A stretch of 32,000 nucleotides of DNA from Wallemia ichthyophaga EXF-994 (lineage: Eukaryota; Fungi; Basidiomycota): the NCBI RefSeq assembly GCF_000400465.1, contig NW_008806281.1, positions 1 to 32,000 on the forward strand, in the 5' to 3' direction. The notes under the pieces are model-generated. The model saw only the letters and a program-made list of their open reading frames with translations. It did no database searches and was not told the origin of the DNA. The position numbers and the translations under genes were made by a program. Below are positions 632-20,730 of the stretch, in pieces (within the stretch, counting starts at the first letter, position 1; every line of letters starts with the position of its first letter).

Positions 632-1681
632 TCAACACACACCTCCAAAGTAAATACCACAACCGAGTACGACGGCAATAATCGCACATGAGACAATAGT
701 GATCCAGAAGCAGATCCACCTTTTACGTCTAGCGGCTCTGGCGGATTTAACAGCTCTTTCAGTCTGGAGAAGACCGAGTTCCATATCTTTGTTAGTCTCT
801 TCAGCAGAAGCGTGGATGTTTTGTAGAGTATCGTCTTGTTGCTCAACGAGGATAGACATGTCGTTGAACAACTGAGCCAACTCGGTCAGAGTTCTCTCAA
901 TCTTTTTGATATCCTCGTGCCTATCTTGAACCTCTCTATAAGCAGATTTAGCATCACCGTATCTATTAGATTGTAAAAGAGCCTGACTGAATATCTGATT
1001 ATCGGGGCTATCAACAGCCTGTTCAATCTCATCAGGGTTAGCATCAGGTTTAACAATTCTGTATTGTCTCTCAATTCTTTGTTTCTGCTTTGAGCGTGAG
1101 GTTTGCTCAACTTTCTGATAATCTTGGATAGTCTCTAAGAATTTACCCTTTACAGACGCAATTTGAGTTCTTCTAACGTTGATGTCGTTTGTAGGGACTT
1201 GACCAGACGCGTTTTCCTTCTCGAGGGATTTAATTTCAGTCTTTATCTTGTTAGTGAGCTTCGAGGTGTGTGAGACGAGTGATTCAAGTTCAGCGTGAAC
1301 GCGATCTTGAGCCTTCTCATCCATGTTATTCAAAGACTGGTTATGTAGCTGGCCAATCTGTGAAATATTTCCTTGTAAACCAGCTAACGACGACTGTATA
1401 TCTGATATTTTGTTGAAAAACGACGACATATCACCGATAGTGGATATGTTCTTGGTAGAGGATACATCGTCCATCTCATATTGGGGCGTGGAGTATGAGT
1501 GCTGTTGGAATTGGCTGGTGGTGAGTGAGTTTAGTGTGCTGTGCGCTACGCAGTAATCTTACTCGTAGCTTCCACCGCCAGCGTTTTGCTGAGCCTGTGA
1601 TGATTATTAGATGATTAGATCTTTATACGCGTTTTTAAGCGTATAACTTACTCTCAACGCAGCTAGCCTATCTCTAGCCAT
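632..1681 (-). CDS. SSO1: Plasma-membrane syntaxin t-SNARE (Sso1/2-like), 3 exons (1681-1652, 1594-1563, 1514-632)
   Basis: Exon 1 encodes MARDRLAALR. GT-AG introns 1651-1595 and 1562-1515 join in frame to the 280-aa ORF, which has Habc helices, a SNARE motif (IKKIERTLTELAQLFNDMSILVEQQD) and a C-terminal TM (RRKRWICFWITIV...). Confidence 0.93.
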
Positions 1682-1811
1682 GACTATACGTGTTCAAGGT
1701 GCAATAACGCATAAAAGGTATAAAATATTTATTTTAAAATTGTTTATCTTGTATCATATAGATACTCTTCTCACTGATTGTCTACTCCTTACAACCGCGA
1801 TACCACCTTTA

Positions 1812-2509
1812 ATGGCACCTTCAAAATCTAAATTAAGGGAATTCACAGAGCATCAAGGTCATTTTAGTCTTGTGAGGTTGGTAAATTAGTCCATTCTCTC
1901 TCCCGCCCACTCACTCCGCTTAGAAACTTCCACCTCGCTGACCTCTTTACAATCATGAACGGCGTCTGTGGCGTTAGTTCCTTGTTTTCATCTGCTCACT
2001 ACCTCATCGATCCTTCCAATAAGCATCCTCTATACGCTGCACTTCTCCTCCCTGCGTGTGGTTTCATTTTCGACGCTTTAGACGGCAAAGTAGCTCGCTG
2101 GAGAAAGTCATCTTCAATGCTCGGTCAGGAATTAGATTCGCTGGCTGATCTTATCAGCTTCGGCGTTGCACCCGCCTTTCTCGCCTTCTCTATAGGTCTG
2201 AGGAGCAAGGTGGATATGATCATGTTGATTGGCTTTGTTTGCGCAGGTCTAGCAAGGCTTGCTCGATTCAATGCAACGATCGCCAATCTCCCTAAAGATG
2301 CCAGTGGGAAATCAAAGTACTTTGAAGGACTACCCATCCCTTCTAGTCTCTGCCTCGTCGCTTACATGGCTTATCTCATTCACAACGATCTAATTCACGA
2401 TAGTATACCACTCGGGTATCATTTGCACGCGCTGCACCCACTCAGTCTCCTCTTTGGACTGTGGGCTGCTGCGATGGTATCGAAAACATTACGAGTACCA
2501 AAGTTATAA
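1812..2509 (+). CDS. CHO1: CDP-diacylglycerol--serine O-phosphatidyltransferase (phosphatidylserine synthase), 2 exons
   Basis: MAPSKSK...HFSLVR joins NFHLADLFTIMNG across intron 1877-1923. CDP-alcohol phosphotransferase motif DALDGKVARWRKSSSMLGQELDSLAD; also RLARFN and FEGLPIP. Confidence 0.93.
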
Positions 2510-2539
2510 AGTTGAAGTGAAATGCATTTTATACGTTAT

Positions 2540-2923
2540 TCAATGACTCATATTCTTCTTGCCCTTCTTTAGCCTTCTCGATATTATCTTCCTGCCTGTC
2601 CTCGAGCGTATTCTCGCCAAGAAGCCGAAAGTGCGTTTTCTCTTGCGTGTCGATGGCTGATAGTCGGTGCCTCTGTAAGGTTGTCAGCTGGAGTGGAGAA
2701 GAAGGTAGCGATCCACCAACCTTGAGCCGAATCTCAATCCACTCGCAGCAATAGCTGAAATGGCTGGTAAGGTTGGTCGCCTATTGAGAAGCGTGGTGAA
2801 TGTCGGGAAGAGTGGGATGTTCCCAGGCATAGTGAGTGCAACTGGCCTAGTAACTTTACTAATTGAACGTGTAAAATTTAAAATATTTCCATTTAAAACT
2901 CTTTGGATAACAGATCGTGGCAT
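2540..2923 (-). CDS. MRPL34: Mitochondrial ribosomal protein bL34m, 2 exons
   Basis: Removing intron 2720-2673 gives ...[50 protein letters not shown], the L34 signature, after a presequence-like N-terminus. Confidence 0.9.
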
Positions 2924-2968
2924 CGTGGTCGTCGATAAAGACGATAAAATCTAAATTGGGAGTTTAAA

Positions 2969-3493
2969 ATGCTCAGTGGAAGATATACATCCAGATTGAG
3001 GCGGGTTCTTAGAGTGCCCACCCACGCAGCGCAATTCTCATCGATAAACGCGTTCGACAGGACACTGCAGGTGAAAGAGCAGCCAGAAGACAGGGAAGTC
3101 ATGGCATTAGAAAACAAGCAAAACCTTGCTTTTGAAACTTTCGTTGCTGCTCATCGCCCACTCTTCATTTCTGGTCCTGCTCTCCCTTCGAGTGCCACTC
3201 CAGCACCGCACAAACTCAACGATGACCAGATCGACTCTATCCTCGACGATATCGATTGTGCTCTCTTTAAAGTCAAGATCACTGAGTTGGCTGACTACAG
3301 GGGTGCTCTCGCTAGAATCGGCCTCGGCGAAAGCCTCCAAATCGAGCTCGACAGCGTAAAGAGGAAGAGAAAGAAGAAAATGAACAAGCACAAGTATAGG
3401 AAACGTAGGAAGGTTTGTGAGGGATGTATTACATTTACTCTTCTAACCAATCAACAGGCACACCGTGCAGAAAGGAAGCGACTCGGCAAGTAA
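2969..3493 (+). CDS. COX24: Mitochondrial small-subunit protein mS38 / Cox24 C-terminal domain protein, probable intron 3413-3457
   Basis: C-terminal SVKRKRKKKMNKHKYRKRRK|AHRAERKRLGK and an Arg-rich presequence-like N-terminus. The intron runs GTTTGT...CTAAC...CAG. Confidence 0.85.
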   Translation: MLSGRYTSRLRRVLRVPTHAAQFSSINAFDRTLQVKEQPEDREVMALENKQNLAFETFVAAHRPLFISGPALPSSATPAPHKLNDDQIDSILDDIDCALFKVKITELADYRGALARIGLGESLQIELDSVKRKRKKKMNKHKYRKRRKVCEGCITFTLLTNQQAHRAERKRLGK

Positions 3494-3514
3494 AGAAAGT
3501 AAAGAAAGTAAAGA
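3488..3514. repeat. 9-bp tandem repeat (AAGTAAAGA)x3 overlapping the COX24 stop
   Basis: Read directly from the sequence: aagtaaaga aagtaaaga aagtaaaga. Confidence 0.85.
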
Positions 3515-3530
3515 ATATATGGATACATAC

Positions 3531-4652
3531 TCACTTCACCACCACATCAATCTTGGCCCAGTTTTGGTACACATTCCCTTCATCCTTGTTGAGAATGGTC
3601 GATGTATTCGCGTGAGCTGCGTACTCGTCGTGCAAAAACGTAGCGAGGGGGTGATGAAATTCGAAAAACGCGCTGCCATGTCTGGGGTAAGCTGCGTCTC
3701 TATCCTTATCATCGACATGGCACGGCTTGCGATGTGCAGCACTCTTATCGAATTTACCGCCAGCGTAAAACATGACGCCAGACTGATTGGTGTGGAACCT
3801 GAGTGCGACGTCTCCACTTTCGAGTGTAAGCTGAGGCTGGTGAGTTTGTGCGATCTCCGTTGCCGGTTTCACATCCTGCAGTGAGTGTGCGATTGTCCTG
3901 TCTATGCCGCGTGCATTTCTGTCAAAGAGGTAGTAGTGGTCTTGCACGATCTCCCTATCACCGATCTTGCGCTGCGTTGAAAAGTCGAATGGCGTGCCTT
4001 GTATCGCCACGCTCTTGCCAGTAGCAAGTTTGGTCGCTGGGTCTGTTTCGGCGATGCTGCGCGCATTCAGGTATAGATCGTGGTCGGCGATGGTAGATGA
4101 CTTGACCTGGTCCGCTGTGAGATTGAATCCCCAGTGCTGGGTGAGGTTGATCGGACATGCAACCTCATCGAGCATCTTGGCGCGGTGGGTGAGAATCAGG
4201 CTGTGGTCACTGAGGAAGAAGGCTGCCTCTACTAGCATAGTGCCAGGATAGCCATTCTCACCAGAAGATGAGACATAATTGAACAAAGCCATGGAGTGAT
4301 TGGGGAGTCTGTCGTTTTCAGCGTATAGCTGCGCCTGCTCAAGTTTAATAGGGGCGAACAACTTCTTATCGAAAGCGTCTACACCGCCGTGGAGGGATAC
4401 GCTATCACCCTCGACGAGTTGTGGAGTGAATGAGGTCGATGAATCTATCTGATGATTCCCAACAGGAAGTCTGTTTGTATATCTCCCAATTATCGTATGC
4501 AGGAATTTACTCTTCTGGTGGTCCTCCACGTCTGGCGCTGGGATAACGTCGATGGTCTCACCATTACTGAGATTTATCTGGAGACTGTGCACTGTCAATC
4601 CAAATTCGAGTACTTGCAAGGTTATTCTGTTGTTTGGTGATGTTATTTGCAT
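3531..4652 (-). CDS. GALM: Aldose 1-epimerase (galactose mutarotase, GalM-like), stand-alone
   Basis: 373-aa ORF with IGRYTNRL, SLHGG, ENGYPG, NLTQHWGFNL, GTPFDF, FHTNQSGVMFYAG and a C-terminal FEFH (catalytic His/Glu equivalents by inference). Confidence 0.88.
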   Translation of the reverse strand: MQITSPNNRITLQVLEFGLTVHSLQINLSNGETIDVIPAPDVEDHQKSKFLHTIIGRYTNRLPVGNHQIDSSTSFTPQLVEGDSVSLHGGVDAFDKKLFAPIKLEQAQLYAENDRLPNHSMALFNYVSSSGENGYPGTMLVEAAFFLSDHSLILTHRAKMLDEVACPINLTQHWGFNLTADQVKSSTIADHDLYLNARSIAETDPATKLATGKSVAIQGTPFDFSTQRKIGDREIVQDHYYLFDRNARGIDRTIAHSLQDVKPATEIAQTHQPQLTLESGDVALRFHTNQSGVMFYAGGKFDKSAAHRKPCHVDDKDRDAAYPRHGSAFFEFHHPLATFLHDEYAAHANTSTILNKDEGNVYQNWAKIDVVVK

Positions 4653-4910
4653 TGTCGTTGTTCTTGTCGTTGTTCTTGTTTAACGGTTATCTCCACGGCT
4701 GTCTCCGCTTATGTCTACTCCAGACAAAGTCATCTTACTAATCTCGGAGTCTTCCATGATGGTGTGTGGTGGTGTAGGTGGGTGTGTCAATGCGCGTTAA
4801 CTTCAATCGGTACCAGCCCGGCTTCGAACCTCCAACCTTGCCTTGTTCTGTACACCGAAGTCACATCCCACCCCACTTATCGCCTTATCTTCGCTCTTCC
4901 ACCAGCTAAA

Positions 4911-6560
4911 ATGGTTGCACCAGCAGATCTCCCGCTTGTTACCGTCGATGCCCTCGATAAAGTACGCTGGCTGTCTACCCACCGCTCCACTCTCACGCCT
5001 TCTCCAGGTTTACCCCGCGGACAGAGTAACCAATCAAGGTGTTCGCTGGAATTCGTTGGTTGAATCCTTCAAATCTCACTACGGCTACAAACCCGCTTTC
5101 ATCGTCAGGGCTCCCGGCCGTGTCAATCTCATCGGTGAACACATCGATCATGCTCTCTTCGGCGTCGTCCCGATGGCCATTGTCCCCGATGTGATCATCG
5201 CTATTGGTCCGCGTGCAGACACCCATGAGATCAGAGCGCAAAACGTCGATCCCAAGTACCCCCCAACCGCCTTTACTCCGAGCTACAGCGGTGGTCCAGC
5301 CGTCGACATTGAAATACGCCATCTCCAATGGCATTCCTACGTCAAGGCGGCATTGCTGGTGGGCTCTTATGCTTTTGTCTGGCTCAATCCGACGCTGACT
5401 CGCTCCAGGGCTACCTCAAACACCCCCACTCTGGTGGTCAGTCTGCAGGTCTCGACATGCTCTACGATGGCACGGTCCCTGCAGGATCCGGACTGAGCAG
5501 TTCTGCAGCCATGGTAATCAGCACTCTTCTCGCTCTCCTCGCCGCCAACGCACGCCTTGAAGGCATCTCCAAGGGCGATCTCGTCAAGATGTCCATGGGC
5601 GCCGAGGGCAATGTGGGTGTCAACACAGGCGGTATGGACCAGGCAGCCTCCGTCATATCCACTCCTGCTGCCGCTCTCTATGTCCAATTCTTCCCTCAGC
5701 TCGCCGGCGACCCCGTTCCTATCCCCGCCACAGACCCCGCCATCAGCTTCGTCATTGCCAACACCCTCGTAACATCCGATAAAGCGACAACGGCGAAATA
5801 CAACTACAACTTACGCGTCGTCGAGACTCTCGCCGGTGCGGCTCTCCTCGCCAAGAGACTGGGGTTGGCGTATACACCTGCTGATAAAGTGTCCTATCGA
5901 CAGATCGTCAGTGAGGTTGCCGGTGGAGAACACAGTCTCACGGGGGAGAGTGTGGACAACACCGACCCTACCGCAGGGCTGCGTGCGGCGTTCAAAAAAA
6001 CCTTGCAAGCTATCGAACACCATCTCGGAAACGATAGTGTGCGCGATGGACTGAGCGAAGATGATCTCATCGACGCTTTGGATATGTCTAAACAGTCTTT
6101 CGCTGACACTTACCTCTCCCTCGCTGTCGAGCCTCTCGGTGGCAAGTACAGACTTTATTCACGCGCCAAACATATCTTGGAAGAGGCGCTTCGTGTATTG
6201 GAATTCAGAAGGGCTATTGAGACAGGCGCTGATGGTAACATGCAAAATTTACCCAAGTTGCTCGGTCAGATTATGGGCCAGTCGCAGGATAGCTGCAGAG
6301 ATCAATTCATGTGCAGCTGTAAGGAAATTGACGAAATTACTTCCATAGCAAGCGAGGAAGGCGCACTCGGTAGTAGACTAACTGGCGCTGGTTGGGGTGG
6401 GTCCACTGTCAGCCTTGTCCCGGCACATATCGTTCCCCGCTTCATTGAGAATGTCTCCAAGAGGTACAGTAAGTACCAGGGCCTTGGTAAGGATGAGCTT
6501 GAGCAGGCTATTTTCGCTACTCTGCCTGCTTCTGGTGCTTGTGTGCATCCGCTGGATTAA
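4911..6560 (+). CDS. GAL1: Galactokinase (GHMP kinase), 3 exons (4911-4961, 5008-5358, 5409-6560)
   Basis: RAPGRVNLIGEHIDH galactokinase signature, PAGSGLSSSAA ATP-binding loop, GGMDQAAS and GSRLTGAGWGG. Introns 4962-5007 and 5359-5408 restore the frame. Confidence 0.93.
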
Positions 6561-6663: not shown

Positions 6664-7350
6664 CTACGTATCGCCACGCTCGAGCAGACTGCCTGCAGCG
6701 TCTACGTGTGCATTAGTCAGCTCGTCCTCATTGATATCGAGGTTGTTTATCTGTTCGAGTTGCTCATCTTGCTCATCGTGCGCGCTGTGTGCGTCTCCCC
6801 TACGACGCGAGAAGGAGGGCAAGAGCCAATTATCGTCGTCTTGGCTATCCTCGCTATCATCGCTATCACTAACGAACTGCGCATAAGCCTCATCCTGCGC
6901 CTTTCTGCTACTGTGAACGACCTCGCTCATCATGCGCGCACTCTCCTGTCGTGTGACCTCCTCTTTCTGGAGAGCTAGTGAATCGTGTGTGCTCATGAAG
7001 ACGCTCGAGTCGACTGGTTTCTCGGTGGCACTCTTCAATGACATATTGGATATACCCTCGTGCACTTTCTCCTCATCCCTCTTCTCTAGCTCGCTGATGC
7101 GCCTCTGTGCGTGCTCCCGCTTCGCTGCCAGTGTCTCCACAGGGAGGAGCTTCTTCGTAGACAGCCTGTCGAAGCGGTGGATTATCTCCTGCAGCTGTCC
7201 TATATCGCTACATCGATCAATGTCCACCTTCTGACTCGGTGGTGGGCGTAGTAACGATCCTTTCGTTCTGTGGAACGTCATCCTGTGCTGGAGCGGTGGA
7301 AACGCAGTGGGTTTAGGATTGGGTGTGGTGCTTGAACCGCTCGTATCCAT
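6664..7350 (-). CDS. Hypothetical protein with coiled-coil and acidic C-terminal region
   Basis: Long open frame with charged/helical composition, probably starting at MDTSGSSTT (7350). The upstream part of the 306-aa ORF looks non-coding. No family recognised; both ends uncertain. Confidence 0.6.
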   Translation of the reverse strand: MDTSGSSTTPNPKPTAFPPLQHRMTFHRTKGSLLRPPPSQKVDIDRCSDIGQLQEIIHRFDRLSTKKLLPVETLAAKREHAQRRISELEKRDEEKVHEGISNMSLKSATEKPVDSSVFMSTHDSLALQKEEVTRQESARMMSEVVHSSRKAQDEAYAQFVSDSDDSEDSQDDDNWLLPSFSRRRGDAHSAHDEQDEQLEQINNLDINEDELTNAHVDAAGSLLERGDT

Positions 7351-7763
7351 CGCCACCGTTTTGCTCCTTTCGGCGCTCTGTATGCGGTCTGGAAGATGCA
7401 ACATTCTGTGGGTGTTCTTGTAGACGGAGTGAAAGTGCAAGTATGCGAGTGTGTATATACTCATCTCTGATACACTCCCCTCATACCCGTCCTCTCGCAT
7501 CAATAACAACTTTCTCGACAAAAACAGCACGCGGTGGATGAAATTTCTCACATACCTGCAAACACGTAGAAAAATGAAATACATAACAATTATCCAAGAA
7601 TCTATTACATTATTAGCTTGATGTTTCTAATTTAAGCTATGGCTGTGCGGTTATCGCGTGTTTTGCAAATTAACACTGATAACAAAGTAACAAAACGAAG
7701 AAATTGGAAAAAGAAGAAGAAAGAGAAAGCTTTGGGTTATTATACCTCATTACTATCACCAAC

Positions 7764-10219
7764 CTATCCAAAAACTACAGCATACGCATACACTCCTCCA
7801 TCACGATCCTCGAGCGGCGTTGCATGCAACACGCCAAATCGTATATCAGTATTCGACGAGTTGCCTCTAAGACTGAATTTAGATCTACATTTGATACCGC
7901 AAGTGACACTAAGTGGTATACCCTCTTTAAACGCCTGCTTGAGTGCCGTCTTGATGCGTTTCGATTCGAGACGATGTTCTGATCCACACGTCAGTAATTG
8001 AATAAGATCTTGGTGGTTTAGTTGACTGTCAGTGCATTGTTTGATTGTTTCAGTTGGAAGTCCTAAATATCCCAGCAACTCCTTTGTCACAAATACAATC
8101 TCCCTCTTCTCACGCTTCACTATCATAAGTTTGTTGTAAGTGTGGTTGAAGAACTCCATCTGCTTCTCGATCGGTTGTGCCTCCTTCCCGAGCATATTCT
8201 CAGCGCCAGGGAGACGTTGTGCAGACTTATCTTGTGCGCGTTTATCCTTTTTAGCCTGAGAAGAGTTGAACAGACGACTGAGAATGTTACCGGATTTCTC
8301 AGGTTCTGGCTGGAAATGATCAAACGCACGCGCACCGTTGAAGGCCTCCTTTGTAGACTGGTCTTCAAAACTACCAGCTGCAATGCTGCCTGCGCCAACT
8401 CTGCTCATCGACTCTGGTTGCCTTTCGTGGTTATTGTAACGCTGCATCGTCGGCGAGAATGCGACGGCGGTGTTACTGACAGCCTCGTTGGAGATATATG
8501 GTGCACTCCCACCAACCAAGAATGATAGATTCTTCTTGGATGATAGTATCCCAGTTACGTTCACCTGTCCACCGATAAAGTACGCTACTTGGCCTTTGGT
8601 GTCGCGGAGCGGGATGATGTTCACCAGACAGAAGAACGGTGTGCCATCGCGACGGTAATTGAGAAGTAGCTCTGTAATCGGCTCGGCATTGTTGAGTGCG
8701 TCTCTTATACGCTGCACAGAGGCTGGCGCTGTACCTGGACCCTGCAAGAATCTGCAATTGCGTCCTATAATGGTAGTTCTGTCGAATCCACTGACCTGTA
8801 CAGATACGTGAGCAGGTAAACAACTCACCGTACTCTGCTTACCTTCGTGAAACCAAGACTGGACATGACAATAGGGTGATCTCTCAGTCTTGGGTTTGTG
8901 AGTACGAATGAGTCCCCGAGGCCATTGCGCTCGAGATCGTTGAGATTTTCCTTCCCGAGTCTCACCTTGCTCCTCTCAATGAGCTTGTGTCTGATGAAAT
9001 TTTGGAAGTCAATCTCGTAGAGAGAGTGGAGGAGATTGGTTTGGGAGTGAAGAAGGCCAGAATCGAGCTCATTGAGGTATCTCAGTCTGTGGAACACCAT
9101 TTCTGAATGATTTGGAGGCATATCGACTTTAGTATTCGAAGACGGAGCAATGTACAAGTCGTGGAGAGCTTGTGAGCCAGCCCTGATTTGACCTACGATG
9201 CGCTCAAAGACGTCCACATCGGTCCAGTAGTCAAGTTTGTAGGTGGATGGGGATGAGGATTGCTCGAGGTACTCTCTGAATCTGTGTCTGCCGAGTGGAT
9301 CTCTGATCAACTCCTCAAAGACATTTTCAGATAGAAGATGGCGCATTGAGTAATCTAAATCGGCCTGGACTAGCGAAGTTGGCAGAGAAGTCTGAGCTTT
9401 TCTGTCGCCTTCAATGATCCTCCAGTCAGGGAGGTTTGCGATGTTAGAGGATTGCTGAGCGGGCGTTGCTCTAGACGGAGCCCAATTAGCAAGATCTGAG
9501 CTTCTTTGAGCGGATTCGTTGAGGTTTGTGGAGGAGGAGTTGAGGTAGTTTGTGTTGGTGTTGGTGTTGCCGAGGCCGTTGACACTGCCACCGCCGCCGC
9601 CATTAAGATAGCCACCGCCAAAATCATAGCTGGACTTTATCCTGGAGGAATTTGGGTGGGTAAAGTATCCAGCGCTGTTTGTGATAGGTGGGCTAAGTGG
9701 GGGAGTTCCTGGAATGGTCGATTGATCATTTGGGAAGGGCAGGTTGTGGTATTGTCTGAATGAAGGTGGCGTAGGGAAGTTTACGTGTAGGTGCTCTTGG
9801 GAGAGGGGGATCTGCGGTGGTGGAGAATGCGGTGGAGGTGGCTGCTGTGGGTGTTGGACTGATGGCTGTGGCTGGGACTGTAACTGTAGTTGTACCTGCA
9901 TCGTCTGATAGCGTGAGTTTCTATCAGAGGATGTCTGAGAATTCGAGCGTGAATTTGTCTTTACTTGTAGATCGGGCGTGGATTGATCAGAATCTAAGCG
10001 GGAATATGTCAAAGTATCCCGTACGAATCACTCCAACTCACCAGAGATATCAGAGTTCGCATCAATGAACTTCTGCTCGTTCACGCTGTGTATTGGATTC
10101 TCCTTCAATCCGCTCGTTGGCTTCCTGTGTCTTCTATTAGGAGATTGTGTGCTCAGTAAACACTCCACTCACTCATTCATGTTCAACGCCAACGCCTTAT
10201 CCAGAAAGACTGTGTCCAT
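7764..10219 (-). CDS. RGS-LOV-DUF blue-light photoreceptor (BcLOV4-like architecture), 4 exons
   Basis: RGS-like domain (LIRDPLGRHRFREYL...KLDYWTD...LLHSLYEIDFQNFIRHKL), then LOV (SFVLTNPRLRDHPIVMSSLGFTK|VSGFDRTTIIGRNCRFLQGPGT...LLNYRRDGTPF...FIGGQVNV) across intron 8842-8796, then a C-terminal PAS-like DUF. The 5' introns 10172-10134 and 10041-9994 are inferred. Start is 10219 or 10180. Confidence 0.9.
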
Positions 10220-10833: not shown

Positions 10834-12632
10834 ATGCCAACAACAACAGCAATAGCAACAGATTCATCAGATACACCACACTCCTCCAACCAAGACGTCT
10901 CACTCACAATCTCCCACTCCCGCCCCTCCTCGTTCAGATGTTCCTGGCGCACACTGCTCAATCTCCCGCGCCGCGTATTTGCTCCACCGGCGATCCCTTC
11001 TGCGCCCAGGTTTAAAGTGCGTTCCTGTGCAGCGACGCCGCTCGATGCTGTCACGCTCGAGAGCATTCTCAACGACAGCTACCTCCCGCCACTGGTGAGT
11101 GTCGTTTGTGTGAGTGGTGTGCGTGGTGCGCTTACAACTGCTTTCACCCACAGACTCTCGTCGATTTCCAAGACTACCTCGTCTTCAGCGAGAACAGCGT
11201 CGAGAATCTCTTTTACCTGCGCTGGTTGGCACATTACGCGTCGTTGCACGAGAAATTGAATTCTATAAGCAATAACAATGGCATTAACAACAACAACAAC
11301 AACCAACGTAGCAGCAGCGATGCGGCAGAAGTGATCGATGAAATGTCTCAGCAATACCAGCGTTCTCTTTCTACTTTCATCCTCCCTGGCAGCGCATACG
11401 AGCTCAATCTGCCATCAAAGCTTATCCAGGAACTGCTTATGATTGCTCCACAGCAGTATGTAGATGTCGGTGATCTCACATCAACGCATAGACACGCCGT
11501 TCTCCCTCCCCCAGCTGACGCTGTGCCTCTTGTGCAGTGCAAACATGCTGTTGTGCAGATGTTGCGCGGCAGCGCACGCAAATTCTCAGCCAAATCCCCA
11601 GCTAATGGAGGACGCAAGCGTGGCTGGTTTGCGCTCTTTGTTGGTGTTCTTTTTGGTCTCTTTGGTCTGCTTATCGTGCTCGTTGCGCGTCTTTATCAGA
11701 AGGGTGTGATGTTCTTTTCCATAATCGTACTACTCTGCTAATAGAGCTAATCACAGGCGACGGCGGTAGACGCACTGCTGGTGCTTCTATCCCATTCTTT
11801 TGGTTCGGCGTCGCTACTTTTGTGATGGGATTGCATGGCGTGGGTTGGAGGTGTTTATATAAGCGTCTCGCTCATACCGTTTCCCATTTAGATATGCATC
11901 GTCGTCTTCATGTTCGGTGGTGTGTAGAATGGGCTAGACGTGCTAAGAAACCCACTCAAACGACACAGACGCGCGTCAACTACATCCAATAGAGCTCGCG
12001 ATGGCGCCTTCGACGCTTTATCATACTAGCAGTGGTAGTGGTAGTGCTAAAACTCACACATCCGACGAAAGTGAGTTGGGTGAGACACGATGAGAATACA
12101 CCCACTCATACCGCCCCCAGGAACGCTTGGCGTCGGCGCTGATGCATATGGACTTAATACCAAACGTTCAAATACCACGACATCGCATCGCAGCAATTCC
12201 GACGACAATACATCGCAAACATCGCACACATACACTACTCCGAACAATGCAGAACGCGGTAGTGACAAGATAAACAAGGTAGACAAATGCGACGAATATG
12301 ACACAACATTTTACCACGAAGACGCTCTGAAAAGTGCTAATACGCGCATGAAACGCAAATTTGAACAGGTGCCGCCCGTGACGACGACAGCGACTTACGT
12401 ACCTTACATCGATACGCCATTCGTGCCAAACAAGCCTGGATACTTGAAACGATTTGGTACGGTGACTCGCCACACTCAACCAAAGAGTGCAGGTGTGCGT
12501 GGTGTGTTTGAACCACTGACGAGCGTTGACGAACCCATCGTCAGTCGCGTGCAGTTACAGGTGTTCTACTTGGCTGTCGTGTGGGCTACTATTCTGGCTG
12601 CTGTAGGGGGTACGCTTGCCATCGTGCTTTAG
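10834..12632 (+). CDS. Rax1-like membrane protein with N-terminal RGS-like fold and about 3 TM segments, 6 exons
   Basis: VTLESILNDSYLPPL|TLVDFQDYLVFSENSVENLFYLRW (RGS-like), two hydrophobic segments, FGDARQLHPIE, and EPIVSRVQ plus a C-terminal TM. Introns 11095-11153, 11704-11756, 11840-11891, 11920-11968 and 12071-12120 all restore the frame. Start uncertain. Confidence 0.8.
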
Positions 12633-12789: not shown

Positions 12790-14097
12790 TCAATCCTCCA
12801 TTTCGACATTTTGTATATCGTAGCGCCTACCTCGCACGGCCCACAAACCCCAATTAGATTTAATCATGACGCGTGTATCGAACTCGGCGACTTCCCAACG
12901 TTGACTGCTAAAGACGTTGTTGCCAGGCTCGATGACGGTTTCCCACTCCTGTGTGATTTGTTTGCTGTTGAGTAGAGCGTCTACATCGCGCTTGATATCT
13001 GCGTGACCAAAAGCCGTGCAGACGATTGGACATTTAGTGGAGAGCATTTTATCGAATGCGGTTGCCCATTCGGCATCTATCTGTGGAGTGAATTCGCGGA
13101 AGGGGACGACTTGGCCGTTGCGCTGACCCAGACCTTCGCTTGGTCTGTGACTGGAGGGCAGCATAGATGGGAAGCCTAAACCTGGGTGAAAATTGAAGAA
13201 GATATCAGTAAAGGGGTCGTAGGGGTAGAAAGCATCGTGGACTTCCTCCCAGCTAGCCTGGATAGCGCTGAGGGTGAGGTGAGAATTGACGGTGGTGCTC
13301 CATCCGGGCACGCCGAACGGGCGTATTGTCTCCTCGGCGTTGACTTCCGGGCCAACGAAATAGACATGCAAACGAGCGTGCGGGAAGAGGTGAGCGAGCT
13401 GCATCCATACACTCGGAGGCAACTGAGATTCAGCGCGGGCGCCTGGGATGAAAATACGCACGGGCGGTGTCGGCGGTGAGTAAGGAGTGGGCTGTTTGTG
13501 AAGGGTGTGACGAAGCGCGAGGAGGCTGCGCTCGCCGCCCCCACTGACCCGCCCACCCGCACGGTCAGCATATGGACCCAGCTCGTGCAGCACGCCTGCC
13601 ACGGTCATAGGATAGCTGAGGAGACGCGAGAGATGGCGCTGGGACCGCAGACTGTCGATGCTATTGAAATTGCGCGTGTAGAATAACATCTCCCAGCTCT
13701 TGAGGTTGACAGTGTGCTCGAGATCTTGCGTAGGAGGCAGCTCGAACTCGGTCATGTCGCGCCCACTGCGCAGATCGTGCTCATCTTCATTCACCTCGCG
13801 CAGCCGCTGCGCATACTCGTGGTAGTGCTCGTGCGTGGCGTCTGCTCGCCACGCTGCCTCGTCGACGTGCGTTGGGTAGCCACTCACTGGACACACGTAC
13901 CCCAAAGGACTCTCGCCCGTCGTCGGACACCGCCCCTTGCGCGCTATTCGCTCACCTAGTGCCCGCATGGCCGGTATGGGCGACGCTGGCAGCGGATGGA
14001 AGAGCGAATTGAGCGTGCCGGCGTTGGCTGTGCTGCGTTTGTTCTGTGCTCCGCCTTTGCGGAATAGATTGAGTATGCGACGCGCTCCCGAGGCCAT
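12790..14097 (-). CDS. MSS51: Mitochondrial COX1 translational activator Mss51
   Basis: CP..SGYPTH, LREVNEDEHDLRSGR, FYTRNF, LSYPMTVAGVLHELGPY, GARAESQLP, FHPGLG and MIKSNWGLWAVRGRRY motifs; mitochondrial presequence-like N-terminus. Confidence 0.9.
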   Translation of the reverse strand: MASGARRILNLFRKGGAQNKRSTANAGTLNSLFHPLPASPIPAMRALGERIARKGRCPTTGESPLGYVCPVSGYPTHVDEAAWRADATHEHYHEYAQRLREVNEDEHDLRSGRDMTEFELPPTQDLEHTVNLKSWEMLFYTRNFNSIDSLRSQRHLSRLLSYPMTVAGVLHELGPYADRAGGRVSGGGERSLLALRHTLHKQPTPYSPPTPPVRIFIPGARAESQLPPSVWMQLAHLFPHARLHVYFVGPEVNAEETIRPFGVPGWSTTVNSHLTLSAIQASWEEVHDAFYPYDPFTDIFFNFHPGLGFPSMLPSSHRPSEGLGQRNGQVVPFREFTPQIDAEWATAFDKMLSTKCPIVCTAFGHADIKRDVDALLNSKQITQEWETVIEPGNNVFSSQRWEVAEFDTRVMIKSNWGLWAVRGRRYDIQNVEMED

Positions 14098-14179
14098 GGA
14101 CGTTGATGTTAACGATAAGATAATTAATTCAAATCACTCTCTACAAAACACACGGCGCACACGGCGCACATGGCACACC

Positions 14180-15617
14180 TCACACACCCGTCTCATCCCT
14201 TATCTCGCTCGAACTAAAGTTGAGTATCCCAGCGGTATCGAGGTCCTTGACAATGTTCTCCGCGGAGGAGACTGGCAAATTAGCGAGATATTTGTTGACA
14301 TTGTCGAGAGAGTTAGAAGATAGAGCTTGCTTCAATTCCCCGTCAAAGGCTTCGAAAATACTCCAGCGCTGATTGAGCCACTGCTTGACAGTCTCACTGT
14401 CGAGTTGCTGGAGCTTAGCGTCGCCTTCGAGGATAATGTTCTCAGGCGCAGGTCCCTCAGGCACGTCGAAGGTGATAGCGGTGTCTCCCTCGCTCATCAA
14501 CTGTATCTGTTCCTTTTCCTGTGGATTGTTGGTGCTGCTCGACTGCTCAGCTAGCACCGCACTGCGCTCCATAATGCGCGCATGGGTGTCTTGAACATCC
14601 TTCATAAACACTGCCTCTGCCTCTCTGGCCTGGGTGAGACGCTGCATGAACAAACTGAGACCATCCTTGCCGAGTTTGTTGCAGTATTGGATAAATAGCC
14701 CCGCGTTGACACATTGAAGGGCATGTGTGGTCTTCTTCTCCATCCCGGCGTTGAATGCCTCGACGAAGAGGGCGTCTGTGGTGACGTCACTCAGGAGCGT
14801 TTTGTCGGCTGCTATTAACTCGACCAGGGCCTTGTACTGGCGGAGAGGTATGCGGGCGAGTGTGGCCATGGAGGGGGTAAGAGAGGGGAGGTCGTCTGCG
14901 GTGTTGTTGGCGGTGTTAGCGGGGGTGTTCGTGGCAGCGTCTGGATTAAGGACTTCTAGGGATTTTTGGGATGGCTGGGAGTGTTGTTGCTGTGACTTAT
15001 TCTCCTCTTGCCCAATCTTGTTCACATGGGAGCTGTCAAAACCGGTTCTGATCCCCTCGCTTGTGATTTTCTGACCCTCTTCGACCTCAATAGCGGCTAT
15101 TTCATCAGCTATAGCTGAATTCCTGTGTAGAACACTCTCCTCAGTCTTCGTGAGCTGGCTGATAAGCTCCGCCGCCAGTTTCTCGCTGTCGTCAATAAAC
15201 ACCCTGGCCTTCTCCCAGACCTGGATAAAAAGGTTCTGCATCATCTCGTCGTAGGTGGGCTGACCCGGAGCGTCGGTGAGAGGTTTATCAGGGGACGGAG
15301 TGTTGCCGAGGCGTGCGACCTCAGCGCTGAACACTTGTGGGCCGTGTTCGTGCACGCCGTCGCGAATAGCCTGTACGCGGGGAAGTAGGACGGCGTTAAT
15401 ACCGCGCTCTATTTCCAGCTTCTTCAGGGCGCTTCTGCGCTCCTCGCGCTTGTGATGAATGTCCTGCTGTTTCCACCTGTGGACGTGTAAGCGGGCAGTC
15501 CGCGCCGCGAAGGGAAGCGCACTTGATAAAAGATTTCTTGTCGACGTTGGGATGCACTTCAATATCGCTGTCATCACTCAACTCGAGATTCGCCCATTTG
15601 TCGTAATTGAGCGGCAT
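14180..15617 (-). CDS. CDC37: Hsp90 co-chaperone Cdc37, 2 exons
   Basis: MPLNYDKWANLELSDDSDIEVHPNVDKKSFIK|WKQQDIHHKREERR across intron 15522-15477; also QYCNKLGKDGLSLF. Confidence 0.95.
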
Positions 15618-15676
15618 CTCTCTCCTTCTCTTGACGGTAAACAACCAAGACGAGTAGTTTGAATAAATTATTATTC

Positions 15677-17220
15677 ATGTCTGCTGGTGATAGATAGTGG
15701 GTGTTTGGCTGTGAATGTGGATATTTTCTAACCATTTCCCATCTTTCAGCTCCCCACGCCTCTCCCCAGACGATGTAGACGTACACACACACGAGATAGG
15801 CAGCGACGTACGAGACGGGCGAGACGTGCGTGACATGCGCGATATTCGCTCCAGAGACCGTTCGCGAGAGCGCCACGAGCGACGCCGCAGCCGCTATGAG
15901 GGGTATGAGAGAAGGGACTCGGCGCACACCCACTCTCACCGCCGTAGAAGATCACGCTCACGGTCGCGGTCGCGGTCCCATTCCCCGCACTCGCCCCGTC
16001 CACGCGCCCGCCCGCCACGCCAGACCCGCCCACGCTCACCCGAGATACCGCTGTCGGAGAATGTCGACAGTCTGGAATCGGAGCAGCGCAGTGTGTTTGT
16101 AAACCAGCTCAGTACACGCACAACGAGCCACGACCTTCGCCGCTTCTTTCAGGAGAAGTTGGGTAGTCGCGGTGTGGTGGATGCGCGGGTGGTGAGCGAC
16201 AAGAACAGTCGCCGTAGCAAGGGCATTGGGTACGTGGAGGTGCGCACTGCGAGCATGATCGATAGTGCTCTCGAGCTCAGCGGGGAGCTGCTCAACGGGA
16301 TTCCTATGATAGTCACCCAGAGCGAGGCAGACAAGAACAGGATGGCGAGGGGTGGTGGTGGTGGTACGAACGCCAACGCGAGTTTGGCAGGCGATGAGGG
16401 GAGACGCGCACGTGCACCTCCAAGCCACAACTCCAAACCATCCTCACACGCCCACGCCAATGACTCCTCCCTCTCTCCCGCTAACGACCCCGCCTTGTAT
16501 AAGGTCTTTGTGGGCAGTCTCAGCTATGCACTGCGTGAGGAGGACGTTCACGGTGTCTTTGCCCCCTTTGGCGCGATCGAGGAGGTAGAACTAGGCAAGG
16601 ATGGCGAAGGGCAATCAAAAGGCTATGCTTATGTCAAGTACAGACGTATGGAAGATAGTCGCATGGCGTGCGAGCAAATGAACCGCTTCGAGCTGGCGGG
16701 GAGATCTCTCAAAGTGCTGCTCGTTAATCACTACGGCACTCCCGTTCGCATGCCCGAACAAAGCATTGAGAACGAGGGCCTTAATCTCAACTCTATCTCT
16801 CGGCACGAATTGATGAAGACACTCATGCGCTCACATGACCCAGCTGCCAGCGCACAGGAAGAGGAGGTGCGCGCGAGGCAGGAAGAGATCGTCAGGCAGA
16901 GGGAGAAGGAGAGGTCAATGATGAAAACAGATTGCGTACTACTCAAGTATATGTTCAAGAGCAGCGAAGAGACGGAGGCTGGTTGGGAGAAGGAGCTAGC
17001 TGAGGATGTGGGTGAGGAGTGCGAGAGTAAATATGGAAAGGTGAGCAAGATTGGTGTGGATAGGAATAGCGAGGAGGGAGAGATAGTACTGCAATTTGCG
17101 ACGCTTGAAGGTGCACAGAAGGCAATTAATGGACTCAATGGAAGATGGTTTGGTGGGAGACAAGTGAAGGCAGTACCAATAGCGGATAGATTCATGGTGA
17201 GGAGAGTATTGATTAAGTAA
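15677..17220 (+). CDS. RBM39: RBM39/CAPER (CC1-like) splicing factor: RS domain, 2 RRMs and a UHM; 2 exons
   Basis: RS-rich N-terminus, RRM1 (SRRSKGIGYVE), IVTQSEADKNR, RRM2 (SKGYAYVKY), LNSISRHELMKTL linker and UHM (LNGRWFGGRQV). Intron 15697-15749 inferred. Confidence 0.92.
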
Positions 17221-17266
17221 AGGTGGCTAATAGAATAATACAGGAAATGAAGCTGGCGAGTATGAA

Positions 17267-17785
17267 TTAAGAAGAGGAAGTGGAAGTGGTGGGAGTTGAA
17301 CCGGGGGTCTGTTGAGGGGGTTGTTGTAGCTGGTTGAATTTATCGAGGATTTCTAACTTATTTGGAGTGTGGAGGGGTAGACTGGAGTGAGACAGCTCCT
17401 TAATTTTAGACTCTAAATGACGTTTAATGGAGTCTTCTTCGTTGGACAAGATGAAAATCAGGAAAGCTTGATCATTTATAGACTTCTTAAGAAAGTTGAT
17501 AGCAGAGTGGATTGAAATTGAGTATTGGTATTGGGTGTCGTCTGAGGTGGAGTAATCGTAGTCGTTGTGGATAAATTCATATTCGATATTCTGCTTAATG
17601 GTGAAGAGCTTAGACTTCAAATCATCATTGAGGTTATTTTGAATTTCAAGGAACTGGACATCTTCAAAGTGGCGTGGTGGAACGAGATCGCTGAGTGATT
17701 GAGTGGAAGTGAGCTTAAGTAACAAGGAATCTATCAAAAATGAATTCAATATGGACACTGAATTGATTTTGTTTGATTTATCCAT
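17267..17785 (-). CDS. Probable Cnl2/Nkp2-family inner-kinetochore (CCAN) subunit
   Basis: N-terminal SILNSFL...SL...LVPP...IKQNIEYE and C-terminal heptad AINFLKKSI...LSNEEDSIKRHLESKIKELS resemble Cnl2/Nkp2 by eye. The only Met codons in the ORF are at 17794 and 17785. Confidence 0.5.
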   Translation of the reverse strand: MDKSNKINSVSILNSFLIDSLLLKLTSTQSLSDLVPPRHFEDVQFLEIQNNLNDDLKSKLFTIKQNIEYEFIHNDYDYSTSDDTQYQYSISIHSAINFLKKSINDQAFLIFILSNEEDSIKRHLESKIKELSHSSLPLHTPNKLEILDKFNQLQQPPQQTPGSTPTTSTSSS

Positions 17786-18407: not shown

Positions 18408-18493
18408 TTGTTTTAAATCATTTGTATCGCCTTTTTTGTACTCTACACGTCTATCTACACGTCTTATTCCACCAATGTCTTCTTATTCCGCCA

Positions 18494-19810: not shown

Positions 19811-19838
19811 TGTATCTAATTATCTTCAAGTGTATTAT

Positions 19839-20573: not shown

Positions 20574-20730
20574 GATGGTTGGGTGGCACGAGTGGAGCGA
20601 GAGCGAGAGTGTATGTGGATCTACGTGCGCGCGCACATGCGCCGAAATATCCTTATTTCCCGCCATCTCTCACGTTCACCTTCCATCTCCCATCTCCCAC
20701 CGCCACCATTCTTGTTTTGCTACGCCGATC

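What the first reader, a model, noticed from the sequence alone, without database searches (positions are those of the whole stretch)
7764..10219. Intact RGS-LOV-DUF blue-light photoreceptor hidden across split ORFs
Seen: one 47-nt intron (8842-8796) joins an RGS-like domain to a LOV domain. The LOV keeps the photo-adduct Cys (GRNCRFLQG, codon 8756-8754) and the signalling Gln (FIGGQVNV), and has no long FAD-loop insertion after CRFLQG. A PAS-like DUF follows. Established: this is the architecture of RGS-LOV photoreceptors such as Botrytis BcLOV4, which are recruited to anionic membranes in blue light and are used in optogenetics. Inference: this is a functional, WC-1-independent light sensor in a compact basidiomycete and a candidate new optogenetic part.
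Basis: partly seen in the sequence, partly recalled or inferred. Interest (0 to 1): 0.75.

Follow-up and report, generated by a model that had tools for sequence, protein, structure and literature searches.

The report
Wallemia RGS-LOV blue-light sensor gene
This is an intact, spliced gene of the salt-loving fungus Wallemia ichthyophaga for a blue-light sensor of the known RGS-LOV family (the family of the optogenetic tool BcLOV4); it is real and conserved, but it is already in the databases under the wrong name "Phototropin-1A" and no one has tested it.

Summary
On the minus strand, four exons (10219-10173, 10124-10042, 9993-8843, 8795-7764) give a 770-aa protein. It is 100% identical to Wallemia ichthyophaga EXF-994 "Phototropin-1A" (XP_009267850.1). 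The 47-nt intron 8842-8796 is exact, and an intron sits at the same position in the W. mellicola orthologue and in a Wallemia paralogue.

The protein has four parts:
- a low-complexity N-terminus;
- an RGS domain (Pfam 30.8 bits; profile vs RGS17, E=7e-9);
- one FMN-type LOV domain (AsLOV2, E=1e-27, ungapped) with Cys441 and Gln504;
- a C-terminal domain with a predicted PAS fold, homologous to the DUF of BcLOV4-type proteins (hhalign 98.3%, E=1.3e-14).

Synonymous sites against W. mellicola are saturated while LOV and DUF pN is 0.03-0.04, so the gene is under strong constraint.

It is therefore a member of the known RGS-LOV-DUF family, in a basidiomycete branch where I found no tested member. 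It is not unannotated, and it is not a phototropin.

It differs from BcLOV4 in four ways: a weaker and more distant amphipathic basic linker motif, Cys in place of the flavin-contacting Asn492, an RGS domain lacking the canonical Gα-contact residues, and a longer linker. Photochemistry, membrane recruitment and independence from WC-1 are all untested.

The parts
10173..10219 (-). Exon 1, with ATG at 10219-10217 (MDTVFLDKALALNMNE...)
   Evidence: The start and exon-1 peptide are conserved in W. mellicola (MDSNFLNSALSQPLHE).
10125..10172 (-). Intron 1 (48 nt, GTGAGT...CACAG)
   Evidence: The acceptor CAG|GAAG is the one used by reference model P0129 and is conserved in W. mellicola. My first guess, a 39-nt intron ending AATAG, was dropped.
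10042..10124 (-). Exon 2
   Evidence: The product is identical to P0129.
9994..10041 (-). Intron 2 (48 nt, GTGAGT...GCTTAG)
8843..9993 (-). Exon 3: low-complexity region, RGS domain and the first ~26 residues of the LOV domain
9392..10219 (-). N-terminal low-complexity region (aa 1-244; rich in S, P, N, Q), interrupted by introns 1 and 2
   Evidence: composition. pN of 0.29 against W. mellicola makes it the least constrained part.
8954..9391 (-). RGS domain (aa 245-390; Pfam PF00615 match at aa 269-380)
   Evidence: Pfam 30.8 bits against a cut-off of 23.9. Family profile vs PDB: RGS17 E=7e-9, also RGS4, 7 and 16. AF2 all-helical, pLDDT above 90. RGS4 Gα-contact residues are not kept.
8553..8920 (-). 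LOV domain (aa 402-508), interrupted by intron 3
   Evidence: PAS_9 57.6 bits. AsLOV2 E=1e-27, ungapped. Foldseek rmsd about 0.6 A to LOV crystal structures.
8796..8842 (-).
   Evidence: An intron at the same position, with diverged sequence, occurs in the W. mellicola orthologue (46 nt) and in the W. ichthyophaga paralogue (50 nt).
7764..8795 (-). Exon 4: rest of LOV, linker, C-terminal PAS-like domain, and stop TAG at 7766-7764
8754..8756 (-). Photo-adduct cysteine codon TGC (Cys441, equivalent to AsLOV2 C450 and BcLOV4 C292)
8565..8567 (-). Signalling glutamine codon CAG (Gln504, equivalent to AsLOV2 Q513 and BcLOV4 Q355)
8628..8630 (-). Cys483 at the position of the flavin-contacting Asn492 of AsLOV2
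   Evidence: It is Cys in 72 of 97 family members from the first search and Asn in 24. The ascomycete P0284 and the chytrid P0267 keep Asn.
8238..8291 (-). Candidate counterpart of the BcLOV4 amphipathic helix AH1 (aa 596-613, GNILSRLFNSSQAKKDKR)
   Evidence: It sits at the conserved family motif GFFRGLFGR. The overlapping window PEKSGNILSRLFNS (aa 592-605, about 8303-8262) has the highest hydrophobic moment in the linker, 0.54. But the net charge is only +1 to +3, there is one Phe, and AF2 pLDDT is below 50.
7767..8216 (-). C-terminal domain (aa 621-770), the 'DUF' (renamed TSD), with a predicted PAS fold
   Evidence: No Pfam or PDB sequence match. hhalign against ascomycete BcLOV4-type DUFs: 98.3%, E=1.3e-14. 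AF2 pLDDT 88.7. Foldseek matches LOV/PAS domains, TM up to 0.77.
7556..7791 (-). Not part of the gene: a 236-nt GT..AG span used as an intron by the fused 1058-aa database models
   Evidence: It removes the conserved C-terminal strand AYAVVFG. In the 103 homologues with a DUF match the domain nearly always runs to the protein's own end, and the family consensus ends AFVAVFG.

Best explanation
The locus is the intact, four-exon gene for a 770-aa RGS-LOV-DUF (RGS-LOV-TSD, 'RLT') protein of Wallemia ichthyophaga. It is one of two paralogues in this genus and belongs to the basidiomycete branch of the family that contains Botrytis BcLOV4.

Shown here: the gene structure, the domain identities, homology of all three domains to BcLOV4-type proteins, retention of the photochemical residues, and strong purifying selection.

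Inferred mechanism, by analogy with BcLOV4:
1. The LOV domain binds FMN.
2. Blue light forms a Cys441-flavin adduct.
3. Gln504 relays the change to the C-terminal side of the LOV core.
4. This releases the linker and the PAS-like C-terminal domain from a dark-state arrangement in which the RGS domain holds them.
5. The exposed amphipathic, basic linker segment (aa 596-613) and the C-terminal domain then bind anionic membrane lipids and/or self-associate, bringing the RGS domain to the membrane.

My confidence by step: family identity about 0.95, flavin photocycle about 0.8, light-driven membrane binding about 0.5, GAP activity of the RGS domain about 0.25.
For: - Gene model: the four-exon product is 100% identical to reference protein P0129.
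- Intron 3: conserved in position in the orthologue and the paralogue, with diverged intron sequence.
- RGS: Pfam hit above the cut-off; profile vs RGS17, E=7e-9.
- LOV: E=1e-27 to AsLOV2, ungapped. N449, C450, R451, Q454, R467, N482 and Q513 equivalents are all kept. The predicted fold superposes on LOV crystal structures at about 0.6 A.
- C-terminal domain: homologous to ascomycete BcLOV4-type DUFs (hhalign 98.3%, E=1.3e-14, 126 columns), with a predicted PAS fold.
- Comparator: P0284 (Botryotinia convoluta) carries C292, Q355, FFK408 and FKK412, exactly the published BcLOV4 coordinates (PMC6099885). It aligns to the Wallemia protein over RGS+LOV at 31% identity, E=1e-41.
- Constraint: pN/pS against W. 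mellicola is 0.03/0.81 in LOV, 0.04/0.78 in DUF and 0.10/0.79 in RGS.
- Linker: a conserved amphipathic motif lies at the family's AH1 position.
- Mechanism in BcLOV4 and relatives: PMC6099885, PMC10410727 and PMC12667789 (8 of 11 ascomycete homologues translocate in light).
Against: - I found no tested basidiomycete member. All characterised proteins are ascomycete (PMC6099885, PMC12667789; one search found nothing else).
- The AH1 candidate has net charge +1 to +3 and one Phe, against +5 and three Phe in the BcLOV4-type sequence. It lies about 92 residues after the Gln, against 53. AF2 does not predict it as a helix, and no Jα helix is predicted either.
- Asn492, a flavin H-bond partner described as highly conserved, is Cys here. 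AsLOV2 N492A still photocycles but N492Q did not express (PMC3903614).
- The RGS4 Gα-contact residues E87, N88, N128, D163 and R167 are S, K, D, I and N here, so classical GAP activity is doubtful.
Confidence: 0.75

Rival explanations
1. It is a genuine LOV photoreceptor of the same family, but the basidiomycete branch signals differently from BcLOV4. Possible outputs are light-controlled oligomerisation, or a protein-protein interaction of the RGS-homology or PAS-like domain, rather than direct electrostatic membrane binding and GAP action.
For: - The linker motif is weak and distant, and not predicted helical.
- The linker is about 40 residues longer and carries extra conserved motifs (SPTM..., AAG) absent from the ascomycete sequences.
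- The Gα-contact residues are lost in the basidiomycete clade but kept in the chytrid homologue.
- Asn492 is Cys in 72 of 97 members.
- The basidiomycete clade is separate, with 100% bootstrap.
Against: - The motif at the AH1 position is conserved across chytrids, ascomycetes and basidiomycetes.
- The DUF, which itself binds anionic lipids in BcLOV4 (PMC6099885), is homologous.
- The paralogue has a strongly basic motif, GSKMKKLFSKSR, net +5.
Confidence: 0.2
2. It is a phototropin, as named in the reference annotation (Phototropin-1A, or Phototropin-2 in UniRef).
For: The database names. The best PDB sequence matches for the LOV domain are phototropin LOV2 domains.
Against: There is only one LOV domain and no protein kinase domain. 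Pfam finds only RGS and PAS families. The region C-terminal to LOV has a PAS fold, not a kinase fold. The name was evidently transferred from the LOV match alone.
Confidence: 0.01
3. The true product is the 1058-aa protein annotated in most other W. ichthyophaga assemblies, which continues through a 236-nt intron (7791-7556) into the downstream reading frame.
For: A canonical GT..AG pair exists that keeps the frame. Thirteen or more database models use it.
Against: - It deletes the conserved last β-strand, AYAVVFG. In the 103 homologues with a DUF match the domain nearly always runs to the protein's own C-terminus, and both paralogues and the W. mellicola genomic ORF stop at the same place.
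- Two annotations, EXF-994 and E3P91, call two separate genes.
- 236 nt is about five times the length of the gene's three other introns.
Confidence: 0.04
4. The gene is conserved but the LOV domain is photochemically inactive, a flavin-free or adduct-incompetent PAS domain with a structural role.
For: Asn492 is Cys and Asn414 is Ser in the pocket. Several basidiomycete family members have lost the NCRFLQ motif altogether, so loss of photochemistry does happen in this family.
Against: NCRFLQ, R467, N482 and Q513 equivalents are all intact. LOV pN is 0.03, the lowest in the protein. AsLOV2 N492A and N414S still bind FMN and photocycle (PMC3903614).
Confidence: 0.05

Closest known systems
BcLOV4 (BcRGS1, GenBank CCD53251.1) of Botrytis cinerea and the ascomycete RGS-LOV-DUF / RGS-LOV-TSD ('RLT') proteins (CeRGS, MoRGS5, EaRLT, FeRLT, ArRLT and others)
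   Same: - Same domain order: low-complexity N-terminus, RGS, a single FMN-type LOV with the adduct Cys and Gln, a linker with an amphipathic basic motif, and a C-terminal PAS-like DUF that ends the protein.
- RGS+LOV align at 31% identity, E=1e-41, with the BcLOV4-type sequence P0284.
- The DUF is homologous by profile-profile comparison.
   Different: - Separate basidiomycete clade.
- The DUF is too diverged for pairwise BLAST.
- The linker is about 40 residues longer.
- The AH1 counterpart is ILSRLF...KKDKR instead of FFKSFKKYK.
- Asn492 is Cys.
- The RGS lacks the SEEN/EVN-type Gα-contact residues.
- There are no experimental data.
Second Wallemia RGS-LOV-DUF paralogue (W. ichthyophaga EOQ99530.1 / TIA88042.1; W. 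mellicola P0008)
   Same: 51-53% identical with the same architecture. It has the same intron position in the LOV domain, the same Asn492-to-Cys change and the same C-terminal ending.
   Different: Shorter N-terminus, and a more basic linker motif (GSKMKKLFSKSR, net +5 against +2). It lies at an unrelated locus next to an importin gene.
Phototropin LOV2 (e.g. Avena sativa phot1 LOV2, PDB 2V0U)
   Same: The LOV core is 42-48% identical and ungapped, of the FMN type without an FAD loop, with the same Cys, Gln, Arg and Asn482.
   Different: No second LOV and no kinase. No long Jα helix is predicted. N492 is Cys, N414 is Ser and F494 is Val.
Chytrid RGS-LOV-DUF proteins (e.g. Cladochytrium replicatum KAI8804254.1)
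   Same: Same three-domain architecture. The DUF is found by the basidiomycete profile at about E=1e-9 against the whole library (P0235, cluster-mate of P0267), or E=1e-18 in a local search of four sequences.
   Different: The chytrid keeps the canonical RGS motifs (SSENIQFW, EVNID) and Asn492 (FWNL).

Membership tests
RGS-LOV-DUF (RGS-LOV-TSD, 'RLT') photoreceptors, type member BcLOV4 | RGS domain N-terminal to the LOV domain | tested here: met
   PF00615 at 30.8 bits against a cut-off of 23.9, aa 272-383 of the 773-aa model. Family profile vs PDB: RGS17 E=7e-9 and more than 30 other RGS structures.
RGS-LOV-DUF (RGS-LOV-TSD, 'RLT') photoreceptors, type member BcLOV4 | A single LOV domain with the adduct Cys in GRNCRFLQG and the conserved Gln | tested here: met
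   Cys441 and Gln504. The alignment to AsLOV2 is ungapped, E=1e-27.
RGS-LOV-DUF (RGS-LOV-TSD, 'RLT') photoreceptors, type member BcLOV4 | C-terminal domain homologous to the BcLOV4 DUF/TSD, which ends the protein | tested here: met
   hhalign of the basidiomycete profile (Wallemia sequence first) against the ascomycete DUF profile: 98.3%, E=1.3e-14. Predicted PAS fold. The stop follows directly.
RGS-LOV-DUF (RGS-LOV-TSD, 'RLT') photoreceptors, type member BcLOV4 | Polybasic amphipathic helix (AH1) in the LOV-DUF linker, continuous with Jα | tested here: inconclusive
   A conserved motif lies at the right place (GNILSRLFNSSQAKKDKR), overlapping the window with the top hydrophobic moment of the linker, 0.54. 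But the charge is +1 to +3 against +5, there is one Phe against three, it lies about 92 against 53 residues after the Gln, and no helix or Jα is predicted.
RGS-LOV-DUF (RGS-LOV-TSD, 'RLT') photoreceptors, type member BcLOV4 | Low-complexity N-terminal region | tested here: met
   aa 1-244 are rich in S, P, N and Q, with pLDDT below 50 where modelled.
RGS-LOV-DUF (RGS-LOV-TSD, 'RLT') photoreceptors, type member BcLOV4 | FMN binding and a reversible cysteinyl-flavin photocycle | not testable with these tools
   Only the sequence determinants could be checked. All are kept except that Asn492 is Cys.
RGS-LOV-DUF (RGS-LOV-TSD, 'RLT') photoreceptors, type member BcLOV4 | Blue-light-induced binding to anionic membrane lipids | not testable with these tools
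   Shown only for ascomycete members (PMC6099885, PMC12667789).
RGS-LOV-DUF (RGS-LOV-TSD, 'RLT') photoreceptors, type member BcLOV4 | Groups with family members in a tree | tested here: met
   NJ tree of RGS+LOV. The Wallemia pair falls inside a basidiomycete clade (100% bootstrap), separate from the ascomycete clade holding the BcLOV4-type sequence (97%).
Canonical GAP-active RGS (R4/RZ type) | Gα switch-contact residues (RGS4 E87, N88, N128, D163, R167) | tested here: not met
   The Wallemia residues are S, K, D, I and N, and the positions vary across the clade.
Phototropin (the database name of this protein) | Two LOV domains plus a C-terminal Ser/Thr kinase domain | tested here: not met
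   There is one LOV and no kinase family in Pfam. The C-terminal domain has a PAS fold.
White collar-1 / VVD-type fungal LOV | FAD-accommodating loop insertion after the NCRFLQ helix (plus a GATA zinc finger in WC-1) | tested here: not met
   The alignment to FMN-type AsLOV2 is ungapped and there is no zinc-finger hit.

The most novel reading that the evidence does not exclude
The basidiomycete branch of the family, including this Wallemia protein, may be a functionally distinct kind of RGS-LOV sensor. It has a second cysteine in the flavin pocket in place of the conserved Asn492, an RGS-homology domain that no longer contacts Gα in the classical way, and a long linker with a weak basic motif. 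That could give a different photocycle and a different output from the electrostatic membrane switch of BcLOV4. In an obligate halophile, any electrostatic step might also be tuned to unusual ionic conditions.
Probability: 0.15. Interest if true: 0.55.

Novelty: new member of a known kind. Interest (0 to 1): 0.3.

Why it matters
The practical result is modest. It corrects a misnamed gene ('Phototropin-1A') and several fused or truncated gene models in Wallemia assemblies. It also shows that the RGS-LOV-DUF family described from ascomycetes has a large, conserved and, as far as I could find, experimentally untouched basidiomycete branch, plus chytrid members. For optogenetics, the Wallemia protein and its more basic paralogue are reasonable candidates for the kind of homologue screen already done with ascomycete proteins, this time from an extreme halophile. 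Nothing here predicts that they will work better than BcLOV4, and the weak linker motif argues for caution.

Tried and rejected
1. My first gene model used a 39-nt first intron, giving 773 aa with ...MNERHRKPTSG. I dropped it for the 48-nt intron, which matches the reference protein exactly and whose acceptor is conserved in W. mellicola. Residue numbers refer to the 773-aa model and are 3 higher than in the final model.
2. The supplements of three BcLOV4 papers, which might have held the BcLOV4 sequence, are not held.
3. The basidiomycete DUF profile, searched against 1.84 billion representatives, returned only basidiomycete and chytrid proteins among those I could name, and no ascomycete. 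Ascomycete homologues were reached only by using a chytrid homologue as the query.
4. The DUF profile against PDB sequences gave nothing significant. Only the fold comparison shows it to be PAS-like.
5. The fused 1058-aa model was considered and rejected.
6. Literature searches for Wallemia with LOV, photoreceptor or white collar, and for RGS-LOV in basidiomycetes, found nothing relevant. The Glantz 2016 LOV survey is not held.
7. dN/dS could not be given as a ratio because synonymous sites are saturated (pS about 0.8).
8. Whether Wallemia has WC-1 was not tested. It lies outside the window and I had no reliable query.
Full report
**Observation**

The region was read on the minus strand. Two long ORFs, 8825..10012 and 7764..8828, lie in different frames. 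Removing the 47 nt at 8842-8796 (GTAAGC...CTCAC...ACAG) joins them in frame.

The junction peptide ...SLGFTKV|SGFDRTTIIGRNCRFLQG aligns without a gap to oat phototropin LOV2 across the junction.

Two more 48-nt introns lie near the 5' end. With exons 10219-10173, 10124-10042, 9993-8843 and 8795-7764, the product is 770 aa. It is 100% identical to P0129, the protein that the Wallemia ichthyophaga EXF-994 reference genome calls 'Phototropin-1A' (EOR01059.1 / XP_009267850.1).

My first model used a nearer acceptor for intron 1 and had three extra residues. The reference acceptor is the one conserved in W. mellicola. Residue numbers are therefore 3 higher than in the final model.

**Is the intron real?**

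No transcript data were available, so I used comparison. I fetched the W. mellicola orthologous locus (L001, syntenic: MSS51 / unknown gene / this gene / galactokinase-type GHMP kinase / aldose epimerase) and the locus of a W. ichthyophaga paralogue (L003).

Both have an intron at exactly the same place, phase 0 after the Lys of GF(T/S)K and before V(S/T)G(F/Y). The lengths are 46 and 50 nt. GT..AG is kept, but the intron sequences are otherwise unrelated, while the flanking exons are conserved. That is the pattern of a real intron.

It does not lie between the RGS and LOV domains.

**Domains**

- RGS. Pfam gives RGS (PF00615) at 30.8 bits, cut-off 23.9. A profile of the RGS region from 21 family members finds RGS17 at E=7e-9, then RGS4, 7, 9, 16, GAIP and others in the PDB.
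- LOV. Pfam gives PAS_9 at 57.6 bits. The LOV domain matches AsLOV2 at E=1e-27.
- Predicted structure. An AlphaFold2 model of aa 229-773 built on 69 homologues has pLDDT above 90 in an all-helical RGS domain, in the LOV core and in the C-terminal domain. The linker is disordered.
- Fold comparison, whole model. Foldseek superposes the LOV core on many LOV crystal structures at about 0.6 A. The best overall match is the Brucella LOV-PAS tandem.
- C-terminal domain. The last 150 residues have no Pfam or PDB sequence match. Modelled alone they reach pLDDT 88.7 and match LOV/PAS domains with TM up to 0.77 at 10-16% identity.

**Relation to BcLOV4**

The first homology search returned about 100 basidiomycete proteins with the same three regions, then phototropins. 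No ascomycete appeared among the 120 best hits listed.

A profile of the C-terminal domain, searched against 1.84 billion representatives, found only 189 clusters. All those I could name were basidiomycetes or chytrids.

Using a chytrid homologue (Cladochytrium replicatum) as query brought in the ascomycete proteins. One of them, P0284 from Botryotinia convoluta (593 aa), has Cys292, Gln355, FFK at 408 and FKK at 412. These are exactly the coordinates published for BcLOV4 (PMC6099885), so it serves as a BcLOV4-type comparator.

- The Wallemia protein aligns to P0284 over RGS+LOV at 31% identity, E=1e-41.
- The C-terminal domains do not align pairwise. Profile against profile, they match at 98.3% probability, E=1.3e-14, over 126 columns, sharing the F..(T/A)YSK and H.TP(L/C)KD motifs.
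- In a neighbour-joining tree, the two Wallemia paralogues pair (100%) inside a basidiomycete clade (100%). This clade is separate from the ascomycete clade (97%).

The protein is therefore a member of the RGS-LOV-DUF family, renamed RGS-LOV-TSD or RLT in PMC12667789. It sits in a branch where I found no tested member.

**Is it functional?**

Between W. ichthyophaga and W. mellicola, synonymous sites are saturated (pS about 0.8). Nonsynonymous divergence (pN) by region is:

| Region | pN |
|---|---|
| LOV | 0.03 |
| C-terminal domain | 0.04 |
| RGS | 0.10 |
| Linker | 0.15 |
| Low-complexity N-terminus | 0.29 |

This is strong constraint, concentrated on the folded domains. The flavin and photocycle residues N449, C450, R451, Q454, R467, N482 and Q513 (AsLOV2 numbering) are all kept.

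**Differences from BcLOV4 that bear on mechanism**

1. The flavin-contacting Asn492 is Cys (Cys483, codon 8630-8628). This holds in 72 of 97 family members from the first search, while ascomycete and chytrid members keep Asn. In AsLOV2, N492A still binds FMN and photocycles (54 s against 80 s), but N492Q did not express (PMC3903614). I expect altered kinetics rather than loss of function.
2. In BcLOV4, membrane binding depends on a polybasic amphipathic helix, AH1 (residues 403-416), continuous with Jα (PMC6099885).
   - The family has a conserved motif at this place. The basidiomycete consensus is GFFRGLFGR, the chytrid has GFVTWLKNIFSSK, and the BcLOV4 type has SFFKSFKKYK.
   - In Wallemia it reads GNILSRLFNSSQAKKDKR (aa 596-613).
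   - The window overlapping it is the most amphipathic of the linker (moment 0.54, above the protein's 95th percentile).
   - However, it has one Phe and a net charge of +1 to +3. It lies about 92 residues after the Gln instead of 53. AlphaFold predicts neither it nor a Jα helix.
   - The paralogue's motif, GSKMKKLFSKSR, is much more basic.
3. The RGS4 residues that contact Gα (E87, N88, N128, D163, R167) are S, K, D, I and N here and vary across the clade. The chytrid homologue keeps SSEN and EVN. Classical GAP activity is therefore doubtful. The dark-state inhibitory role that the RGS domain has in BcLOV4 remains possible.

**Annotation problems**

Most other W. ichthyophaga assemblies carry a 1058-aa model. 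It splices from 7791 to 7556 into the downstream gene.

This removes the last β-strand, AYAVVFG. In the 103 homologues with a DUF match, the domain nearly always runs to the protein's own C-terminus, and the family consensus ends AFVAVFG. Two annotations keep the genes apart.

The W. mellicola 766-aa models skip most of the C-terminal domain, although the genomic reading frame is intact and ends VVFG-stop. The name 'phototropin' is wrong: there is one LOV and no kinase.

**Verdict**

The sequence observation is confirmed, and the identification as an RGS-LOV-DUF protein is correct. The gene is already annotated, and it belongs to a family that is known and widespread. No literature on it, or on any basidiomycete member, was found.

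Photochemistry is likely. Light-driven membrane binding is plausible but less secure than for ascomycete members. Independence from WC-1 and usefulness as a tool are untested.

The surroundings are ordinary housekeeping genes: syntaxin, aldose 1-epimerase, GHMP kinase, MSS51, Cdc37, an RBM39-like RNA-binding protein and tryptophan synthase.

Noticed in passing
window 7556-7791 and 6664-7584 (minus strand): Most W. ichthyophaga assemblies in NCBI carry a 1058-aa model that fuses this gene to the downstream gene through a 236-nt GT..AG span, deleting the conserved C-terminal AYAVVFG. The EXF-994 and E3P91 annotations keep two genes. The downstream protein (246-266 aa as annotated, acidic C-terminus ...LLERGDT) has no Pfam family.
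   Followed up: yes
L001:3001-5920 (W. mellicola orthologue): The annotated 766-aa W. mellicola proteins (P0002-P0005) start too late, skip about 100 residues of the C-terminal domain and run into the downstream gene. The genomic reading frame for the full domain is intact and ends GVYAYSVVFG-stop. W. mellicola also has an extra intron in the N-terminal region (VNE|QK) that W. ichthyophaga lacks.
   Followed up: partly
window 8628-8630 (Cys483): The flavin-contacting Asn492 of AsLOV2, described as highly conserved in LOV domains, is Cys in this protein and in 72 of 97 basidiomycete RGS-LOV homologues. Ascomycete (BcLOV4-type) and chytrid members keep Asn. This puts a second cysteine in the flavin pocket, with unknown consequences.
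   Followed up: partly
P0267 / P0235 (Cladochytrium replicatum), P0258 (Quaeritorhiza), P0262 (Dinochytrium), P0288 (Rhizophlyctis): RGS-LOV-DUF proteins exist in chytrids, although the family has been described as a Dikarya class. The Cladochytrium protein keeps the canonical RGS motifs (SSENIQFW, EVNID), Asn492 and an AH1-like GFVTWLKNIFSSK.
   Followed up: partly
L003:2001-4431 (W. ichthyophaga paralogue, P0006/P0007/P0140): Wallemia has a second RGS-LOV-DUF gene, 51-53% identical and present in both species, so the duplication predates their split. It has the same LOV intron position and a far more basic linker motif (GSKMKKLFSKSR). It too is annotated 'Phototropin-1A' or 'Phototropin-2'.
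   Followed up: partly
P0152, P0155, P0164, P0173, P0206, P0226, P0227, P0230, P0231 (rusts, Microbotryum, Botryobasidium and unnamed): Several basidiomycete proteins have the family's RGS and C-terminal domains but no NCRFLQ motif. They may be light-blind derivatives of the family, or gene-model errors.
   Followed up: no
window 632-6560 and 12790-23014: The neighbours are ordinary housekeeping genes: syntaxin, aldose 1-epimerase, GHMP (galactokinase-type) kinase, MSS51, Cdc37, an RBM39-like RRM protein, a weak CENP-Q-like hit and tryptophan synthase. The order MSS51 / unknown / RGS-LOV / GHMP kinase / aldose epimerase is conserved in W. mellicola.
   Followed up: partly
window 11106-11741 (+): A 211-aa ORF between this gene and MSS51 has no Pfam match. 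A gene of 443-456 aa without Pfam hits is annotated at the corresponding place in W. mellicola (L001:438-1944).
   Followed up: no
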